Under the pieces are notes generated by a model. The model saw nothing but the letters and a program-made list of their open reading frames with translations. It was not told the origin of the DNA and ran no database searches. Shown piece after piece: positions 44,899 through 56,800 of a DNA stretch of 58,092 bases; position 1 is the stretch's first letter, and the number at the start of each line of letters is the position of its first letter. Source of the stretch: Aplysia californica (lineage: Eukaryota). Location of the stretch: NCBI RefSeq assembly GCF_000002075.1, contig NW_004798057.1, forward strand, positions 103,712-161,803. The letters run 5' to 3'. Both the position numbers and the translations under genes were made by a program.

Positions 44899-47800
44899 CT
44901 GTGAGTGGACCAACGGTGGGGGACATTAGTACTTGGTTAAGTACGGTAATATATGTTTTTTATAGTAGAGGGTTTTATGGCGCTCGCAACTGCATAAGGT
45001 CATATGAGTGCCAAGGGGTGGGAGTCAACAGAGAAGTCTTTACAGGGAATCAGACTTAGACAGCTCACCTCTCTAGCTTCAACAGCACAAGGACTGCTTC
45101 GACTATCAAGGCACCCTGGAAAAAGCGGGTCACAAGAGAGCGATAAACATACAAAAGAAGTAGAAGACAATGACAATAGTAAGGATCAGGAAAGAAAAAG
45201 GAGCAGTTCTCTGTTTTAGATCAGGCACAGTTATGAGAGTGACAGGAATCAGCCCATTTACAATTCTACTATGCTTGAACGAGAAATGTCCCCCCCTTTG
45301 GGATTGGCCTAAAGACACTACAGTCAGTGGCACTGCCCCGGGGGGTAAGTACGGTAAGTGGATGACCGGTGGGAACATTAGCACATAGCAACAGAAACAC
45401 TTGAAACAGTGAGAGCATTAGTATACAGCAGGAACAACTGGGAACATCAGAACATAGGAACAGCAAAAACAATGGGAACATGAGTTCAGAACAACAGAAA
45501 CAGTGAGAATATTAGTACATAACAGGAAAAATTGGGAACATCAGTACTTTAGTATTAGTACATGATAGCCTACCAAGTGGACGAACACAGTGGGAACATG
45601 AGTACATAGCAAAATAAACAGTAGTGGGAACATCAGTAGGCCTACATGACAACAGTCAGGAAAAACTGGGAACAGAAACAGTGAGAGTATAGCAGTGGGA
45701 ACAACAGTACATAGCAAGTGGACGAATAGTGTGTACATCAGTACATAGCAAACAGAGCAGTCGACTCACTGCGGTGTGTACATGGCATTGTTGACGACCC
45801 ACAGACATGCATGCACATACACAGGGACACACACACACACACACAGGCAATTAGTGTGTTCACAGACAGACACATACACACGTTGTCAGCGTGTTCACAG
45901 ACAAACAGAGCACAGTCGACTCACTGAGGCGTGTCTGTGGCTTTGTTGACGTCCCACAGACGCACACAGCAGTCGGCGCCACCCGACGCCAGCACGGAGC
46001 TATTCTCGTCAAAGGCCAGGGCATAGACCGTGTCGCTGTGACCTCGCAGCTCCTTCATGACGCGGCCCGTGCGCAGGTCCCACACGCGCAGACGGCGGTC
46101 CTCACCTGAGAGTCAGTTTCAGTTTTAGTAAGTGTGTTTTACGGCACTTGCAACACAATAAGGTCATATAATATAAGTGCCGAATATTAGAGATGTTACA
46201 AGAGAGTAACAAACACTAAAAAAAAAAGGAGGAGAGATCAGGACGATAGATTATAATAATAGGACAGAAAGAGCAAACCACACCAGAGCACCCACCAACC
46301 ACCCGCTGAGAGTCAAATACATGCGCATGCAAAAAGAAAGACAGAAATAACAGAGGGGAGGATAAGAAACAGGGCCTACAAAAAGCACACTCCAACCCCC
46401 TCCCCTCTTTGAAAATATCCAAATTCGTCTTTAAAGCAAAAACTTTGTTTTCTTGGAAACAACATTCTGTTGTTCGGCTCTCCTGTCAAAACTGCGTCAT
46501 ATATTACTGTACTTTAAAAAAATGACGGCATCCACGCTACACTACCGCCTACACCACCCACCCACACTCACCTGCCGAGGCCAACAGCTTCCCGTCGGGG
46601 GAGAAGGCCAGAGCCAGCACCGAGCCCCGGTGACCTTGTAGCAGACGCACAGAGCGGGCCTCCGTGAGGCTCCAGAAGCGCACGGTCTTGTCTCCCGAGC
46701 CAGAGGCCAGGTAGCTGTTGTTGGGGTGGAACTCCACGCACTGGAAAACAAAAAACAAAATAAAAAACAGAAATAAAAAAATCCAACAAAACAGTAATAC
46801 AAAACAACACAATTAGCATCTCCTTTATCATTCTTTGTCCATCAAGGAAATTGTTAATCTCGCAATCCAAGAACGGAGATATCGGCTGAAAATCGACACA
46901 GAGGTCATTATTTATAGATTTTCAACTGACGCCATTTTCTTCAAGTCAACCGTGTCTTTCACTACTTTCAGTATTCCACACTTACAAATTGTACAAACTC
47001 CACCTATAAAATTGATGTATGAATTTCCATTAGGCTGGAATCCGAGAAGTAACTCATTTTGTCAGCACACCTCCCATATGGTCGCTTTTAAGCACAAGGG
47101 GGCTATCCCGAAAAATGCTATTTTGAGAAAATCGAAGGTAAAGTTTTTGACTCTTATTCAGCTTCTTTAAAAGACAAGGAGAGTTTTCTCTATAACCAAA
47201 CAAATATACACACCAAAGAAACCAAACTTCTCCTATAGGTAGGACAGTGCCCACTTTTGGTGTAGGTCATGATTTCTGGAAACCCCCAAAATCTGGGTTA
47301 GCCCACCTGTCCTTTTAAAAGCGACCATGTATTCGGCCAAGCCGAGGAGACTCACATCTACGTCCATGGTGTGCCCCACGTAGGAGCGCAGCGGGAACGT
47401 CCTCTCCGTGGTCCACAGTTTGGCCGTCGTGTCGTGGGAGCTGCTGGCAAACCACGTGTCTGTTGAGCTGGACACACATAAGGCAGGGGAGAAAAAATAA
47501 CTAATAGTAAAAGTAATTATAGTAATAATAGATAGCATATTATGTATACCGTAATTTCCTGTTGAACAGCAAAAACTCTGTGCGCTTTACTCCAGCAGAC
47601 CTGATAGCATTTTGAAACACTCTCAACTTCCTGGGAAGCTTACACAGTACAGTGCAAGCTGCTATTTATAGGCACAAAAATAGTAAGATACTGACAAGAT
47701 CTTTTGCTGTCTACCGATGGGTGGAAAAAGGGAAAGAAATTTTCACCTACAAGTGGCGCCCATTGCTTGTTCACTCTTATCTGTTCACGCGAAAAAAATT

Positions 47801-50800
47801 CTAGCTCATTTATTAATTTCCCTTCTATTCGCACGAAACTTTGCAACAAGCACAGTGGAGACCCACCTGACACTGACGTCCCAGACAGCTGAACTATGAC
47901 CTTTGTAGAGGCACACGTTGCTCTGGGTGGCCATGTCCCACAACCTCACTGCGGAGAACGTACACACACATAGACAAGGCAAGATTAAACACAATATTTT
48001 TAGGTACCAGAAACTAAATTTTCAAAGTAATTGTATGCCAAATTTATCAGTTCCATTTGAAAGGCCTATATCCACTGAGCATTTTGGTACCATTCTTTAA
48101 CTTCTCAGTCAATTTTTAAGAAAATGGTAGTTGTTTAAAATTTGATCAAATTTGTTAAAGTCAGTCACTGGCTGCAACCCCATGTTTGACAGACAATAAA
48201 AGAGTACCAAGAGCACTAAACATCTCCACATTAACTGAGTACAATCACTATAACAAATATATGGAGCCTAATTTTTTTCAAGACTGTGAGATCAGTACTT
48301 TATCGCCTCAAACACGATGATCTGTCGTTATTTCGACAAAAACACAGAGCGTTGACCCGGCCGGCGCCGCACCGGGCCCCGCGGCGAGCGAGTCGGCTCT
48401 ATACTGTAGTGTACCCCGCGTGCGGGGTCACATGCTTTCTGAGTCTCGCGGAAGGATTGATAAAAAATAATTCCAAGTTGATTACTTTATTTTAATAGGA
48501 AATAAGCTGATCTTTTATTAAATATATTTTATAAGCCGGTATTTTACATAAGTGATCTTTAAACATTTTAACAGTATTTTTAAAAGCTTTTTATTTAAAC
48601 GCCAAAGGCAAAACACATACCACTGGAAAGCCCGTTTTAAGCTCTACAGTTCTCCGCCAATGAAAAGACGGTATTTAATCATTCTTCGTTCCGCGAAGCA
48701 TTTGAATGAACCCGTGTCAATTTTTCAACCGGCCGACCACGCATTCCGACTGCGAGGGGCTTCGCTTTCGTCGGCGATTCTCCAGCTCCTACTAATCGGA
48801 CATATAAACAACTTACACCATTGTAACGAGGAAAAGCGGAACTTTTACAAGGTGTAAGGCATTTGGTGTTTTATAGCGAAAGAGCAAAGAAACAGCGATC
48901 GGAATTACCCCGATTTCACCGATACCACGCGGTCGGAAGGCCGCGAGTGCCCGCGAGGCCGTGTTTACGCTACCTAATATTTTTGTAGTTTTCTATTCGG
49001 TTATTTTTACGGCACTTGCAATACAATTAAATCATATATAAGCGTTGAGCATTAGAGATGTTACATTTACATATGAGTTACAAACACAAAAGAAGGAAAG
49101 ATGAGGACGTTAGATGTTAGTTAAGAAAGAAGGAGCAAGCCACAACAGAGAGAGCACCCACCTAACAAACACACCAATATATTTTAATTTTTTTTTTTTT
49201 TAGATAAACGGGGTAAACATAGCCATGAACATATAATATGGGGAAAAGGGTTACCGTACACATCTAGCTGTAGCTGTAAGTGTTTAATGGCTTCATCGAC
49301 ATAAACTGGATCACTGTCACACTACCTGAACTGAATGTTTATTTGACATTTGNNNNNNNNNNNNNNNNNNNNNNNNNNNNNNNNNNNNNNNNNNNNNNNN
49401 NNNNNNNNNNNNNNNNNNNNNNNNNNNNNNNNNNNNNNNNNNNNNNNNNNNNNNNNNNNNNNNNNNNNNNNNNNNNNNNNNNNNNNNNNNNNNNNNNNNN
49501 NNNNNNNNNNNNNNNNNNNNNNNNNNNNNNNGACCAGAGGAATCCTCGGAGCAGGACAACAGGTGACTATTGGAGTTGTACAGGAAGCGACTTCTGTACA
49601 CGGGGCCTCGGTGACCCACCAGCTTGGCCGTCTCTGTGCTCTGGCCACTTCTGAAACAAAATGCGAACTTACATCATGAAAAACAGTTCAGTTTAGTCTA
49701 GTTTTTCACTCAAGTAGACAGTAGAACATTGACAAGATAAGTAACATTTTGTGCTGTGAAAGTAAAAAAGCATGGGGCAGTGCATGGCGAAAAACACAGG
49801 GGAGAAAGTAAAGAAGTAGGACCTGCCAATGGTGTTCTTTAACTGTCTCAGGAAACACTTTTCAGCTGCCCAGTGAGAGATTTGTTCTATAGGGTAAGGG
49901 TGCAAGCGCTGTGCCAGAACCACAACCTAGAGGACAAGGTGTCCCAATTTCGGGACACACACGCACAAACATGCACACACACGCATATATGCATGCAAAT
50001 GTGCACACCCATTTACACACACACTCTTCCCTCCCACATCCTCTCTTCCACACACATCTGTGCACATAACCATGATAATATAATAGTATGCTAGCACTCA
50101 CAAACGGGCTCACAGTCATGTGTATAATAAAAATAAAAAGTAATCAAAAACAGCAATATAACTTAAAAGCACAGTGAGGCAACGTGGTGAAATCAGGCGC
50201 TCGTCAAAATAATGACAGTGAAGAAAATGGCATTTTTCCGCAGGTTCGGGAATTTTTATCGAATTTTTTTTTTTTTTCAGCTCAATACCTTCCATATCCA
50301 TCAAAGAACACATAAACTAAAGGCATAAATAGTGTAAATTCACTGTTCCCAGAATCTCAAACTAAGGACATAACTAAACTTTGGCGATCACTTTCTAGCT
50401 TGTTTTACCTCTGAGACCAGGGGACCCCCACCTATTTCAATCGCCAAAATCTCAACCTGTATAAAATTTAAGATAAATGGATATTTTTTCCATCGAAAGC
50501 AAGACAAATGAAAAAGCTTTACGGCGATACCAATAACTCAACATGCCCAAAAATAGACAAGCACCTGATTCCACTGCTTTGTGACACATATAATTACGGT
50601 TCCCCAGACCCATTAGAAACGCTGACCTTTTGTTCATCCTCTCCTTGATCTCGTCCTCGCTAAACAGGATGTGGTCCGCCCCTAAGACGATGCGACTGAC
50701 GTCCGTGTCTGCGGGCGCGCGGCGGAACACGTCGGGCTCGAGGTTCCAAATGGAGATGCTGGCGTCCTCGAAACACCCGCTCAGCTTCTTCTTGTCCGGG

Positions 50801-53800
50801 GAGATGGTGGAGGAACACAGGCTGAAAGCCACACAATCACACGACTCATACAGTAAACAGGATAATATTCGCGATGACCGCATTATTGATATATTTAAAT
50901 GTAAGTTTAGTATAGTTTTAGTAGAGGTTTTACGGCGCTCGCAACTGCATAAGGTCATTATGAGAGCCAGAAGATAGAGTTATAAGGACGATAGATGTTT
51001 TGATAGGAAAGAAGAAGCAAACCACCCCAGAGCACCCGCCAACCACCCACATTTAAATGTTAACATTCCCAACAATCAAGTGACTCACACAGTGAGAGGT
51101 AATGTTCCCCACGGTATTGTTTTAGTTACAGTTTTACGGCACTTGCAACACAATCAGGTCATATAAGTGCCAAAGATTAGAGTGAGGTGTTACCTGAGAG
51201 TAACAAACAAATTATTCCGAAGAATTCTTAAATAACTTAAAAACTAAAATTATTTTTAAAGTCCAGAAATAAAATAAGTACTATAAACCCAGTGAACAAG
51301 CTAAAACGTCTGCACTGTCAGACGAAAAAATTACATGTACACAGTGTGCTCCACCCCCCCCACTCACCCTTTAGTTCAGTTTTAGTTTTAGTAAGAGTTT
51401 TACGGCACTTGCAACACGATAAGGTCATATAAGTGCCGAAGATTAGAGGTGTTACAAGAGAGTAACAAACATAAAAAAGAAGGAGGAGAGATCAGGACGA
51501 TAGATGTTTGATAGGAAAGAAGGAGCAAACCACACCAGAGCACCCGCCAACCACCCACCCACTCACCCTTGGTAGGTGTTGAGAAACGTGAAGAAACAGA
51601 TAGAAGGCAGGCAGGGAGGTAATCCTCGCACAGCCGAGATGGCCGCGCTCAGCTCTTCCTCCAGACTCTGTTCCTGCTGCGGCTGCTCCCCCTGGCTAGC
51701 CTCCGTCTTCACGGTGACGTCTGTTGGCGTGTCGCCCACAGAGGTCGTCTCTGTGTCCATGTCGGAGAAAGGCTGCAGCTCTAGCTGCCCGCTGGACTCG
51801 GACTTGGTGACTGGAGGTATGGGGAGGGGATACAGGATGTTTGTCAAACTTCCCTGCCGTTATTTCTAAAAGTACACTATATATTTGTGTGTGTCGTATG
51901 CCTAGAGAAAGGTCCCAGATGTTGGAAATTTTTGTTTTTGTTTTAGTAAGGTTTTACGGTCCTCGCAACTGCCTAAGGTCATATGAGCGCCAAGGGGTGG
52001 ATGTCAACAGAGAAATCCAAATGGGGAATCAGGCTTACTCTGATCTCCTCTCTAGCCTCAACAGCACAAAGTCTGCTTCGACTATCAAGGAATCCCCGGA
52101 AATAGCAATTCACAAGAGTGACAAACATACATAAGAGGTAGAGGAAAATGATGATAGTAAGGATGAGGAGAGAAAAAGCAGCAGTTCATTGATAATCAGC
52201 CCATTTACAATTCTACTGTGCGTAAGAACATGTTAATATCCCCCCTCTGGGAATGGCCTACACACAACTTCGGTCAGTAGTACTGCCCTGGTGGGGAGAG
52301 GACACAGAAGATGTTTGTCAAACTGCCCTGCCGTTATTTCTATAAGAGCAATATATATGTGTGTTGCCTGCCTGGAGAAAGGACCCAGTTGTCACAATCT
52401 AGTAGCAAATTCAATGTTGAACACGCTGATTAAAAGAAAAAATTCAAATATCTTGAGTAGCTTTTAAAGATATGCCACATTTTGTAAACTAAAATGTTTC
52501 TAAAAATCTGTTAACAAATCAAATCTTAAATTTCTTTAAGAAAAACAAAAACAACCCCCCCCCCCCAACTCAAACAAACCCTGAAATAAAAAACTAATAC
52601 CAAAATCATTCCAAACAATTCTTCAATAACACAAATTTGAAATCTATTTATGTACCATAAGTACATCTGGGGTTCTTCAAATTACCCCCCCCCCCAAAAA
52701 AAAAATCCAACTAAACCCCAGAGGGCTCAAATTTTATTGAGAGTACAAAGCAGTTCTTGGAAAGAAAAGAGCCTGAAGCACCTACCATTAACTTTGACAC
52801 ATTGGTTGAAGACCTGCAACATGATCATGCTGTCATCAGTCTGAAAAAACAAAAAGAAAACAAAAAACATATCTTTGACATTTTTGATTTCTGTAATTGC
52901 TATTTTAAGTTTATGTAAGAGTTTTACAGGACCTGCAACACGATAAGGGCATAAATAAGCTCCAGAGATTAGATGTGTTACAAGAATGAATGGTAAACAA
53001 AACATATAATTATCAGACCCACTCCCCCCCCCCCTCCCAAAAGAAGATGGCTCTAAAAAAAACCATCCTCCTGCTCTGAAATTTTTTTTTTAAACAAACC
53101 AAATTTTTATTTTTATACAGACAATATAAACAATTTAAAACAAAAAATTAAAGTCAGAAAGTAAAGCAGCTTGTCAGTGTGGTCGTCTATCTGTACCCAT
53201 GTGTTGTAGTATGAGTGTAAGAAGGAGCCAACGAGCAGCAGTAGAAAGGCTGCAGAAAGAGTCAGGAGCCCAGAGGAGGGGGTGGGGGCAGAAAGTGGAG
53301 ATGAAAGCAGAAGACAGAACATTGCTAGAGAGCAGGAAAGGAGGTGAAAGGGGACAATTTTAGAGAAGAAGATTTTTCCCGTCACTACACGGATTCGGAC
53401 CCGCGACCTTTGAATGAGAGGCCAACACCTTAATCTCTAGGCCACGAGAGCCCCCATAGTATGTGTGTGTCAGTGATGTCATCTTTCTGTACCAATGTGT
53501 TGTAGCATGTGTTTGTCAGAGAACACCGTACCTTGAGAAAATGCATCAGATAGTCCATAGTGTCCGGCTCCACGCTCAGCAAGAACCTGTGCTCCCTGCA
53601 AGAGATTATAAAACGACAGTTAATTCAGTCAAGTTTGGTAAGAATTTTACAGCACTTACTGCATAAGGTCCTATTAGTGTGGGTTGTAAGCGTTTTTTTT
53701 ATGCCCCACTAAAAACAATTACTGCAATAGTTCCCTTTTGTTATAATTGTTTTGATTCTGAGAGAGAAAGAGAGAGAGAGACAGAGAAAGAGAGAGAGAG

Positions 53801-56800
53801 ACAGAGAGAAGGAGAGAGGTAAAGAGAGAGGGGGGGAGGGAATGAGAGATGGAGAGGGAAAGAGACAGAGAGAGAAAAAGAGAGAGAGAGAGAGCCAATG
53901 ACGGAGAGAGTTGCTCCAGTCTTACCTGTATTCTGTGACTTCTTTGTTGGACATCACCTCAGCCTTGGTCTCCAGCTTCTTCAACAGTTTCGTTAACGAC
54001 TGACTTTTCTCGTCGGTGAACATTTCTCCGTGTCTCTCGTGGAATTTCTGAGCTGAGAAAAAGAAACGGCAAAATGTTCATGCTCAACTCAATCCTGCCA
54101 TAGGCTTTGTTGTGAAAACAGACAAAAGGGCATAATAACTCATAACAAAATCAAAAAGTAAAAAAAAAATCAACCATCTCAAAAGCAACCACACATGACA
54201 AAAATATAAAATAAGCTGCAAAACACAGATTAAAGATTTGGGTTTATTTCAAGTAGTAGTCAATGTTTCTGCGCCCAATTGTCTGGATGGTCCACTGATC
54301 AGTTCTATCTTTGTCTTCTTCGTGTGACTCAACAGCTAAATCAAAATCTACATCCTCATCAATGATGGATTTCTTCTTTAGACCTGGCATTAAATCCTGT
54401 TTCATTCAAACCTCCCCTTTGGTATAATAACCATGTACCTTGTTACTACGGGAGAGACCAATAATATGTAGACATGAAAGCTTGACTCGTGAGGAAAAGG
54501 AGTTAAAGAAATACAGTAAAAACGCGGCATAATGCACAGGTACGGTTCAAAACGTAGCGTCGGCTGTAATGTTCACTTTAATGTTAATTAATAAGCTGCG
54601 TTCATGATTTAAGCTATACACCAAGGCGTGGGTCGTCCTGTGTGGTTTGCTCCTTCTTTCCAAACATCTGGGGTCCTTATCTCTTCTCCTTCTGTTTTAT
54701 GTTTGTTACTCTCTTGTAACACCTCTAATCTTCGGCACTTATATGACCTTATTGTGTTGCAAGTGCCGTAAAACTCTTACTAAAACTTAAACTAATACCC
54801 CTAGGCGTGATACAGACCTGGAACCTTCTGTCCGTTGCACAACATCTCGAGGTAGGTGTGCACAAACATCGGTAGCAGGAGTGGCTGGAGCTTTGGATGA
54901 TGGGGGCTGGCTGCTCCAAGAATGAAATGCTTGAATCTGAAGAGCAACAACACAGTTTGAGATTAATAAAAAATCTAAAGATATGGGATAAGCAGGCCAC
55001 AATTTACAACAAGCAGAAAGAAGAGAAGACAGAACAAAGGCGCACCTATAAATTCACTACTCTTTTAACTGTAAAAGATATGTGAACCCTTGTAAAAAGA
55101 AAAAGTGCAATTTCATTCAAATGTAACATTTCAAAAAATTTATTGTACATTTCAAGCAATCCTTACAGAAAGAAAAGACTTAGACTTTAGAATCCTATTA
55201 CGAAAACTCAAAATACTTTAGTCAGTATAAAAAACAGTATCTTTGAAATTGCAATGCGGCTGTCTGATCAAATCATGTGTGTTGCAAGCAATCCACTTTA
55301 GTCTGTTTGGTTACTTTTCACACAAGAGACAAAACACTAGTCTTTGTTGTGTTGTTCTTATCAACATTCATGAAAAGCCAGAAAATTCTAAGCCTTGACC
55401 ATAGAATTAAACTGCATTTTGGTGATGATGATGTCAAAAAGCGCACCTTTGATAGTGCTTTGAAAGGGTGTAAAAATGGAATATTATCAAAATTTGGACA
55501 TAAAGTGGATTGCACGCAACAGCGATAAGATAAAATTCTTGATGACTAGCCTTGTAAACTGCTGGTCACATGCTGTGGCATCCCCCGATATGCTGGTGAG
55601 GGCCAGAGTGTTCTCTACACTTGTCCGAGACTTGGCACGACGACGGACAGATAGCTCTGTTACTGTCTGTTCTCGACGGCCATCTTTTCTAGAGGGCATT
55701 TCAGATTCCTGAAAGTTAGAAGATTTTATGTAATCAGTGTAAACAAGACTCAATATATATATATTTTACCATGAAAAACAGTACACAAGCATAAAATTTA
55801 TAATATGGATAAGGCATGTTCATTGATACAAAATCTGAAAAGCAGTCAGATTGATTTTACCCCACTGCACAGGATATTAAATCTTGATCACTATTCTTAT
55901 AATGAAAAATGGTAGTCTGTAGAACAGATTTTAGAAGGTAGTCATAAATTTCTTATATTGACCCTATCGAGTCACATCTCGATCAATCTAACTTTTAACT
56001 ATCCAACCGTTCAAGTACATGGAGGCTCTTTACTCAGCCTCAACCAAGAGCAAGTTGAAAGTGGACAGCCACATCAGTCTCAGACATTCACTGCAAGCCG
56101 AAATTTAGACTAGATTCTAGGGCGCTCTTTGGAAATTGCTTTCCCGTTCCAACTGATAATTTGCCATGTAAACGTGAAGATTGTGTGTTTTTAAAAAAAT
56201 ATTATTTTTGCAAGGCCCCCCCTCCCCCCGATAGCGGGGCGGCTTGAAACCCCCAGGCCCACTGTTATAATGGCTAGTGCGCATTAACACACACATGAAC
56301 ATGGTGGGTCCATCAAAGTCCAATCCAGCCAAAATAAATTTTTAATACAAAACTTAGCCTGTATGACCACTTTTGTCCTTTGCAATTGTGGTCTATTTGG
56401 TTGTTTTTGGTTGTGGCAGGGGGTTAGGCCTAGCTATTGTATTGTTTGGCTGAAAGTGTGAGTCTCAGTTCAGTTGTATTGTTTGCAAGTTTATAAACTG
56501 TAGAGGTTAGATTTTAGAGGGGAGAGCTGTAGCAAGGCAGAGGAGGCCTGCTGAGATTTCGGATGGAGAAAAGGCTAGTTTGAGCCTCGGTTTGTTTCTC
56601 TGTGTAACGTGTGAGATTCCAACGCATCGGGGCTCCATCGTTGAGGAAAGGATCACCACCCAGAGAGAAACAGGTTTGGCTGAGCCCTGCTGTAGGCGCA
56701 GGCAGACAGAAGGTAAGTGTTAAACATTGGTTTATATTCAAGTAACAACAGCAATCACTTTTGTTTCTTTTGTAAACAAACGGGAAGGCAATTTCCAAAG

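What the first reader, a model, noticed from the sequence alone, without database searches (positions are those of the whole stretch)
46106..46315. Insertion whose target-site duplication is the TAF5L 3' splice site
Seen: CTGAGAGTCA (sense TGACTCTCAG, the exon 13 acceptor) occurs at 46106-46115 and 46306-46315, flanking a family A copy. The original polypyrimidine tract stayed with the upstream duplicate. The exon-adjacent AG is now preceded only by the element tail (CTTACTAAAACTGAAACTGACTCTCAG), which contains branch-point-like TACTAAA and CTGAC. Inference: correct splicing now depends on element-supplied signals, while the upstream AG would add 200 nt and shift the frame, a possible NMD switch or recursive splice site.
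Basis: partly seen in the sequence, partly recalled or inferred. Interest (0 to 1): 0.8.

Follow-up and report, generated by a model that had tools for sequence, protein, structure and literature searches.

The report
Old SINE parked on a splice acceptor
A short jumping element landed exactly on the end of an intron of the sea-hare TAF5L gene and copied the splice acceptor to both its sides, so the working acceptor probably relies on signals in the element's tail; this could not be checked with RNA data.

Summary
CTGAGAGTCA occurs only twice in the window, at 46106-46115 and 46306-46315. The two copies sit exactly on the ends of a 190-base copy of a very abundant short retroposon, whose other copies carry their own 9-14 base target-site duplications. 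The host gene lies on the minus strand and is a single-copy TAF5/TAF5L-type gene. Only the exon-adjacent AG (46107-46106) restores the WD40 repeat across the junction.

The copy is old: 7.8% substitutions plus indels against the family majority, and no sibling above 89% identity. The gene has therefore lived with it for a long time.

The exon-adjacent acceptor has the poorest pyrimidine tract of nine acceptors in the gene. The 39 AG-free bases upstream of it are all element or duplication. They hold CTTAC at -23 and TACTAA at -19.

The upstream duplicate AG would add 200 bases and an element-internal T10-AG would add 110. Both shift the frame into early stops.

Dependence on element-borne signals is therefore likely, but it is inferred. 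The NMD-switch idea is untested, and recursive splicing at the upstream AG is rejected.

A documented precedent is the dog merle SINE in PMEL. This scan had already noted the same family crowding acceptors elsewhere in this genome.

The parts
46306..46315 (-). Upstream copy of the 10-base target-site duplication (sense TGACTCTCAG). Its AG (46307-46306) is a decoy acceptor that kept the old pyrimidine tract. Using it adds 200 bases and gives a stop after 22 codons.
46116..46305 (-). 190-base copy of the abundant short retroposon, in the same sense as the gene (head at 46305, tail at 46116). It differs from the family majority by 7.8% substitutions and 11 indel columns.
46106..46115 (-). Exon-adjacent copy of the duplication. 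AG 46107-46106 is the acceptor that restores the WD40 reading frame.
46116..46132 (-). Element tail CTTACTAAAACTGAAAC with branch-site-like motifs: CTTAC (A at 46129, 23 bases from the AG), TACTAA (A at 46125, 19 bases) and CTGAC spanning tail and duplication (A at 46113, 7 bases, probably too close).
   Evidence: the motif block CTTACTAAAACT is invariant in four aligned copies
46216..46227 (-). T10 run followed by AG inside the element. This is a private gain of this copy and the strongest pyrimidine tract in the intron. Using it adds 110 bases and gives a stop after 6 codons.
46142..46182 (-). Predicted hairpin CGGCACTT...AAGTGCCG near the element's 3' end. Its stem holds the only AG of the family's least-diverged copies.
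46331..46376 (-). Pyrimidine-rich tract that served the acceptor before the insertion. It lies inside a repeat unit of about 66 bases (46335-46400) that forms tandem arrays elsewhere in the genome.
46106..46571 (-). The whole intron: 466 bases, or 266 without the insertion, with donor GTGAGT at 46571.
45926..46105 (-). It encodes EDRRLRVWDL...TDTP, a complete WD40 repeat, and is single copy in the assembly.
46572..46740 (-).

Best explanation
A short non-autonomous retroposon (SINE-like, about 180 bases, tail CTTACTAAAAC-TAAAAC) inserted long ago by target-primed reverse transcription into the last 10 bases of an intron of the single-copy TAF5L-type gene. The staggered cuts duplicated TGACTCTCAG, so an AG now sits at both ends of the element. 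The exon-adjacent AG is the working acceptor. Its branch site is supplied by the element's tail (CTTAC or TACTAA, 23 and 19 bases upstream), and its pyrimidine tract is reduced to the CTCTC of the duplication. The insertion was tolerated for three reasons. In the sense orientation the element is almost free of AG. It ends in a branch-site-like motif. A 10-base duplication places that motif at the usual branch distance. The upstream duplicate AG and a later-gained T10-AG inside the element are decoys whose use would give frame-shifted, stop-containing RNA. Shown here: the insertion, the duplication, the age, the reading frame and the motif positions. Inferred: which AG and which branch site are used.
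For: Duplication and element ends. Family abundance: at least 4,815 candidates in the assembly. Age: 14 of 179 substitutions plus 11 indel columns against the family majority, and no other copy above 89% identity, so the differences are private. Gene identity: TFIID_NTD2 domain upstream and WD40 repeats; the upstream exon aligns best as a single stretch to human TAF5L residues 433-486. Need for the exon-adjacent AG: the junction gives LASAG-EDRRLRVW, with the same spacing as LASGSGDKTVRFW and LASGGADCCVRLW inside the two exons. Either alternative AG gives a stop within 6 or 22 codons. The exon has no second copy in the genome. Signals: the AG-free zone of 39 bases lies wholly in the element and duplication, and CTTAC and TACTAA sit at -23 and -19. 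AG poverty: a mean of 2.0 AG per copy in sense against 6.2 expected and 23 in antisense. Sense bias: 15 of 16 tails in the window lie on the minus strand, and 21 of 23 element hits near 29 unrelated WD40 exons are sense to the exon. Another gene shows the same family's tail 24 bases before an acceptor.
Against: No RNA evidence at all. On pyrimidine content the exon-adjacent acceptor is the weakest of nine in the gene: 50% in -20..-3, against 61-89% for the other seven working acceptors, 67% for the upstream duplicate AG and 100% for the internal T10-AG. A simple strength model would therefore favour the decoys. TACTAAA is one base off the yeast consensus, and nothing is known here about sea-hare branch sites. 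Presence of the insertion in other individuals or species was not tested.
Confidence: 0.7

Rival explanations
1. Regulated decoy use. A substantial, condition-dependent share of transcripts splices to the upstream duplicate AG or to the internal T10-AG. This gives stop-containing RNA that is degraded and so tunes the TAF5L level.
For: Both decoys have better pyrimidine tracts than the true acceptor, and both give early stops upstream of the last exon junction. The upstream AG kept the old tract 46376-46331.
Against: No RNA data. The T10-AG is a private, apparently random gain. The upstream AG is followed by C and by the G-rich element head, with GGG at 46304-46302 and 46293-46291; by general knowledge such G runs tend to mark intron rather than exon. 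Noise-level mis-splicing would look the same without being a switch.
Confidence: 0.12
2. The old branch site, upstream of 46315, is still used with the exon-adjacent AG. This would need a distant branch point more than 215 bases away, and the element would supply nothing.
For: Distant branch points exist in other animals (general knowledge). The element is AG-poor in sense, so few AGs intervene.
Against: The upstream duplicate AG, the T10-AG and the hairpin AG all lie between that branch site and the exon. Scanning from the old site would meet the upstream AG first.
Confidence: 0.1
3. The insertion is a recent, polymorphic or harmful allele of the sequenced animal, or an assembly artefact, and tells nothing about tolerated splicing.
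For: Only one assembly was examined, and no empty allele or second haplotype could be looked for in reads.
Against: 7.8% private substitutions and several private indels, with no sibling copy above 89% among the best 40 of at least 4,815 candidates. Clean duplication and exact family ends. Runs from several other samples hold 71-75% of the words of the surrounding 3.4 kb, though it is not known which words.
Confidence: 0.05
4. The exon is no longer used: the gene is decaying or ends earlier.
For: The weak acceptor.
Against: The exon and the terminal exon are open and keep WD40 signatures. The gene is single copy and the insertion is old.
Confidence: 0.03

Closest known systems
Dog merle allele: SINE (SINEC_Cf type) at the intron 10 / exon 11 boundary of PMEL (SILV)
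   Same: A SINE sits on the splice acceptor. Its 15-base target-site duplication contains the original acceptor. The element supplies part of the 3' splice-site signals, and a cryptic acceptor inside the element competes with the original one (PMC7349775).
   Different: Merle is a recent, phenotype-causing allele in the reverse orientation. Its poly(T) acts as the pyrimidine tract, and the tract's length decides which acceptor is used. Here the element is sense, old and apparently harmless, and what it brings is a branch-site-like tail, not a pyrimidine tract. Splicing outcomes are documented for merle and not for this locus.
Intronic SINE insertions near acceptors that cause exon skipping (for example the FAM161A SINE in dogs, PMC3976383, seen by title and abstract only; the canine HCRTR2 narcolepsy SINE that displaces the branch site is from my own memory and was not checked)
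   Same: A SINE lies between the old branch site or tract and the acceptor.
   Different: Those insertions break splicing. This one appears to be tolerated, presumably because the tail replaces the displaced branch site.
Alu exonization in primates (summarised in PMC7349775)
   Same: SINE-borne sequences serve as 3' splice-site signals. Cryptic AGs arise by small mutations, as the T10-AG did here.
   Different: Alu exonization creates new, mostly alternative exons from antisense copies. Here a constitutive host exon would depend on a sense copy.
Earlier notes of this scan on the same genome (s1-725172, s1-728371, s1-725186, s1-710833, s1-717340, s1-758152)
   Same: The same retroposon family of about 180 bases, sense-biased, AG-poor, with a branch-like tail close to exon starts.
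   Different: Those are family-level patterns with tails some tens of bases from acceptors. Here the distance is zero: only the duplication separates tail and exon, so no native branch site or tract is left.

Membership tests
SINE (short non-autonomous non-LTR retroposon) | Short, fixed length and very high copy number | tested here: met
   Copies of 161-191 bases. At least 4,815 first-look candidates in the assembly and several copies per 3-kb locus.
SINE (short non-autonomous non-LTR retroposon) | Variable-length target-site duplications that differ between copies | tested here: met
   Duplications of 9-14 bases could be read in about ten other copies.
SINE (short non-autonomous non-LTR retroposon) | 3' end in a short tandem repeat or A-rich tail | tested here: met
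   Tail (CTAAAA)n-like, CTTACTAAAACTAAAAC.
SINE (short non-autonomous non-LTR retroposon) | Head derived from tRNA, 5S or 7SL RNA with polymerase III boxes | tested here: inconclusive
   No Rfam family matched 46050-46400 at E up to 1, apart from one chance-level bacterial leader. No box search was done.
SINE (short non-autonomous non-LTR retroposon) | Tail shared with a partner LINE | not tested
   No LINE partner was sought.
TAF5L (SAGA subunit) as against TAF5 | NTD2 domain followed by a WD40 propeller | tested here: met
   PF04494 at 24.5 bits (cut-off 22) in 54804-54962, and WD40 in both exons flanking the intron.
TAF5L (SAGA subunit) as against TAF5 | Closer to TAF5L than to TAF5 | tested here: inconclusive
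   The upstream exon scores 125.9 bits to human TAF5L (7ktr_B 433-486) against 113-119 bits to TAF5 chains. This rests on one exon only; no full-length comparison was made.
Acceptor-duplicating SINE insertion (merle type) | Insertion at the intron/exon boundary with the acceptor AG inside the duplication | tested here: met
Acceptor-duplicating SINE insertion (merle type) | Competition between the original and cryptic acceptors seen in RNA | not testable with these tools
Recursive splice site | AG immediately followed by a 5' splice-site sequence (AG|GT...) at the intermediate site | tested here: not met
   The upstream AG is followed by CGGGTG. The exon itself starts GTGAGG after the true AG, but that is coding sequence (Gly-Glu-Asp).
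NMD-coupled alternative splicing | The alternative isoform carries a stop more than about 50 bases upstream of the last exon junction | tested here: met
   In silico only: stops after 6 or 22 codons, in an exon followed by a further intron.
NMD-coupled alternative splicing | The alternative isoform is made and responds to NMD | not testable with these tools
   No RNA data.

The most novel reading that the evidence does not exclude
This locus is a natural knock-in showing that the sea-hare retroposon tail is a working branch site. With only a 10-base duplication between tail and exon, a constitutive exon of an essential single-copy gene would be spliced entirely on element-borne signals. That would support the wider idea that this sense-biased, AG-poor family is tolerated, or even favoured, because it donates branch sites to host introns. 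The leftover decoy AGs at TAF5L would provide an NMD-coupled leak.
Probability: 0.15. Interest if true: 0.7.

Novelty: new member of a known kind. Interest (0 to 1): 0.45.

Why it matters
Insertions this close to an acceptor usually break splicing, and they are known mostly as disease or coat-colour alleles. An old, apparently fixed case in an essential single-copy gene is a ready-made test of how little native sequence a mollusc 3' splice site needs. It also tests whether a retroposon tail can replace the branch site. It gives the family-level pattern already noted in this genome (sense bias, AG poverty, tails near acceptors) its cleanest single test locus. One RT-PCR or a few junction and lariat reads would decide it.

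Tried and rejected
**RNA and DNA reads**
- Runs were found: raw polyA RNA runs X21-X23, DNA-like runs from other samples, and a second organism label.
No junctions, lariats or empty alleles were seen.
Exon queries start at 46737.

**Finding the organism's own full-length protein or transcripts**
- The word search with the 59-residue exon found nothing in its length band.
- The representative search returned only giant WD40 arrays.
- PDB searches with the exon or its first 25 residues were swamped by multi-repeat proteins.
Exons were searched one by one by reference. The two exons were joined only inside a local script, to read the frame.

**Other searches**
- Empty site or second haplotype in the assembly: none. 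Both flanks are unique apart from other repeats.
- Rfam for a small-RNA-derived head: nothing.
- Fold of the whole element: not more stable than shuffles, z -0.73; only local hairpins.
- Tail-to-exon crowding around 29 WD40 exons: 1 of 11 upstream sense tails lay within 100 bases of the domain match. That is too few to test enrichment, so I make no claim.

**Ideas rejected**
- Recursive splicing at the upstream AG (followed by CG).
- A chance 10-mer repeat.
- A recent insertion.

Full report
**What is in the sequence**

The 10-mer CTGAGAGTCA occurs exactly twice in the window, at 46106-46115 and 46306-46315. Dinucleotide shuffles give a mean of 0.08 matches. The 190 bases between the copies belong to a repeat family with about 28 hits in the window. 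A search of the window's own assembly (927,310,431 bases, 4,332 contigs) gave at least 4,815 first-look candidates, and the 40 scored ones are 85-89% identical to this copy.

Alignment of window copies and of copies from 11 other loci fixes the family's ends. In the element's sense the head is GTGGGTGGTTGG and the tail is ...GTAAAACTCTTACTAAAACTAAAAC. About ten other copies have their own, unrelated direct repeats of 9-14 bases at those ends. So the 10-mer pair is a genuine target-site duplication of a retroposon copy at 46116-46305. The element's sense strand is the window's minus strand. The only ambiguity is one base: the G that ends the upstream 10-mer could be the element's first G.

**The host gene**

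On the minus strand the exon 46740-46572 ends ...KLLASA plus one base. The intron starts with GTGAGT at 46571 and ends at 46106. The next exon, 46105-45926, reads EDRRLRVWDL...VRLWDVNKATDTP.

Both exons are WD40 repeats, and an upstream open frame (54804-54962) carries the TFIID_NTD2 domain above Pfam's cut-off. The upstream exon's best single-stretch match among solved structures is human TAF5L residues 433-486, at 125.9 bits. That is somewhat better than the TAF5 chains. 'TAF5L-type' is therefore reasonable, though the distinction from TAF5 rests on one exon.

The downstream exon is single copy in the assembly. I could not verify the exon number 13. The junction made by the exon-adjacent AG gives LASAG-EDRRLRVW. 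Its spacing is the same as LASGSGDKTVRFW and LASGGADCCVRLW inside the two exons, so this AG is the one that makes the proper protein.

**Age**

Against the majority of 24 other copies, this copy has 14 substitutions in 179 aligned positions (7.8%) and 11 indel columns. A second copy in the same gene (51379-51556) has 1.7%. The changes are private, because no genomic copy is closer than 89%.

The insertion is therefore old. As a rough inference it dates to the order of ten million years, since no mollusc substitution rate was available to me. The gene has coexisted with it for that time. The perfect duplication is not informative: about 1.6 changes would be expected in 20 bases.

**The three AGs**

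| Acceptor | Pyrimidines in -20..-3 | Longest pyrimidine run in -40..-3 | Effect if used |
|---|---|---|---|
| Exon-adjacent AG, 46107-46106 | 50% | 5 | correct protein |
| Upstream duplicate AG, 46307-46306 | 67% | 11 | adds 200 bases, stop after 22 codons |
| T10-AG inside the element, 46227-46216 | 100% | 20 | adds 110 bases, stop after 6 codons |

- The exon-adjacent AG has the lowest pyrimidine content of nine acceptors examined in this gene; the other seven working acceptors have 61-89%.
- The upstream duplicate AG kept the old tract at 46376-46331.
- The T10-AG arose from a private two-base gain in this copy.
- Upstream of the exon-adjacent AG there is no other AG for 39 bases, and all of that stretch is element tail plus duplication.
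- In that stretch CTTAC has its A at 46129, 23 bases from the AG. TACTAA has its last A at 46125, 19 bases from the AG.
- CTGAC spans the tail and the duplication. Its A is only 7 bases from the AG, which is probably too close.
- The block CTTACTAAAACT is invariant in four aligned copies.

If the proper protein is made, its branch site almost certainly lies in the element. The nearest non-element intron sequence is 200 bases away, behind the upstream AG, the T10-AG and one more AG in a hairpin stem.

**Why it may be tolerated**

In sense orientation the family has on average 2.0 AG per copy, against 6.2 expected from composition. In antisense it has about 23. The least-diverged copies have a single AG, inside the hairpin stem CGGCACTT/AAGTGCCG.

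The family is strongly sense-biased. Fifteen of 16 tails in the window are on the minus strand. Around 29 unrelated WD40 exons drawn from the whole assembly, 21 of 23 element hits run in the exon's direction. In one of those genes the tail ends 24 bases before an acceptor.

These results agree with earlier notes of this scan on other pieces of the same genome. I treated those notes as leads. I confirmed the sense bias and the AG poverty myself. I did not have the numbers to test whether tails crowd acceptors.

**What could not be done**

The decisive test was RNA junction reads. Suitable runs exist.

Attempts to reach the animal's own annotated protein or transcript contigs failed, because single-exon queries are too short or are swamped by WD40 arrays. 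The two exons were joined only inside a local script, to read the frame.

The small RNA-like runs hold 23-29% of the words of a 3.4-kb stretch. By my own count from the exon coordinates, exons make up about 22% of that stretch. This hints at spliced RNA but says nothing about this junction.

**Extra anatomy**

The rest of the intron is also repeat-derived. The stretch 46428-46531 matches a family of about 100 bases. The stretch 46335-46400, which holds the 'original' pyrimidine tract, matches a unit of about 66 bases that forms tandem arrays elsewhere. The acceptor region of this intron has therefore been rebuilt from mobile sequence more than once.

**Comparison with known cases**

The closest documented case is the dog merle allele. 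There a SINE sits at the PMEL intron 10 / exon 11 boundary, its 15-base duplication contains the original acceptor, its poly(T) acts as the pyrimidine tract, and an internal cryptic acceptor competes (PMC7349775). Other intronic SINEs near acceptors cause exon skipping (PMC3976383, title and abstract only).

This locus differs in four ways: the element is sense, it is old, it is apparently harmless, and it brings a branch-site-like tail rather than a pyrimidine tract. Recursive splicing at the upstream AG is excluded, because that AG is followed by CG.

**Verdict**

The structural interpretation is supported. Dependence on element-borne signals is likely but inferred. The regulatory ideas are untested or rejected. 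This is a new member of a known kind, and it is mainly of interest as a clean test locus for the family-wide pattern in this genome.

Noticed in passing
window 51359-51569: A second, younger copy of the same family (51379-51556, 1.7% from the majority) sits just after the donor of the exon ending near 51574. Its 13-base duplication AAGGGTGAGTGGG (51569-51557 and 51371-51359) contains the GTGAGT donor, so a duplicate donor lies about 200 bases downstream.
   Followed up: partly
window 46335-46400 and 46428-46531; L024 (G000:C250:751790-752656): The non-SINE part of the intron consists of two other repeats. One belongs to a family of about 100 bases that is often found as inverted pairs elsewhere. 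The other is a unit of about 66 bases that occurs as a tandem array with a period of about 67 in L024.
   Followed up: partly
window, 16 tail matches; L029-L058: Strong orientation bias of the family: 15 of 16 tails in the window are on the minus strand, and 21 of 23 hits around 29 unrelated WD40 exons are sense to the exon.
   Followed up: partly
L047 about 1383-1500 (G000:C1415:14837-17944): In another WD40 gene a diverged copy of the same family ends ...ctaaaactaaactgaaaa 24 bases before the acceptor (...cccccag|T). The native pyrimidine tract is kept between tail and AG.
   Followed up: no
window 44955-45000: A diverged family tail (...GCGCCATAAAACCCTCTACTATAAAAAAC) ends about 55 bases upstream of the acceptor of the last coding exon (AG at 44900-44899).
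   Followed up: no
window 49353-49531: An assembly gap cuts the 3' end and donor of the WD40 exon that starts at 49650 (...LLSCSEDSSG then N). I left it as it is.
   Followed up: no
window 21277-21399 (+): An open frame that reads like a 14-3-3 exon (…[20 protein letters not shown]…) on the plus strand, so the window holds at least one more gene in the opposite orientation. I recognised it by eye only.
   Followed up: no
window 46105-46100: The exon behind the acceptor starts GTGAGG, so the junction reads CAG|GTGAGG. This looks like a 5' splice site, but it is coding here (Gly-Glu-Asp).
   Followed up: no
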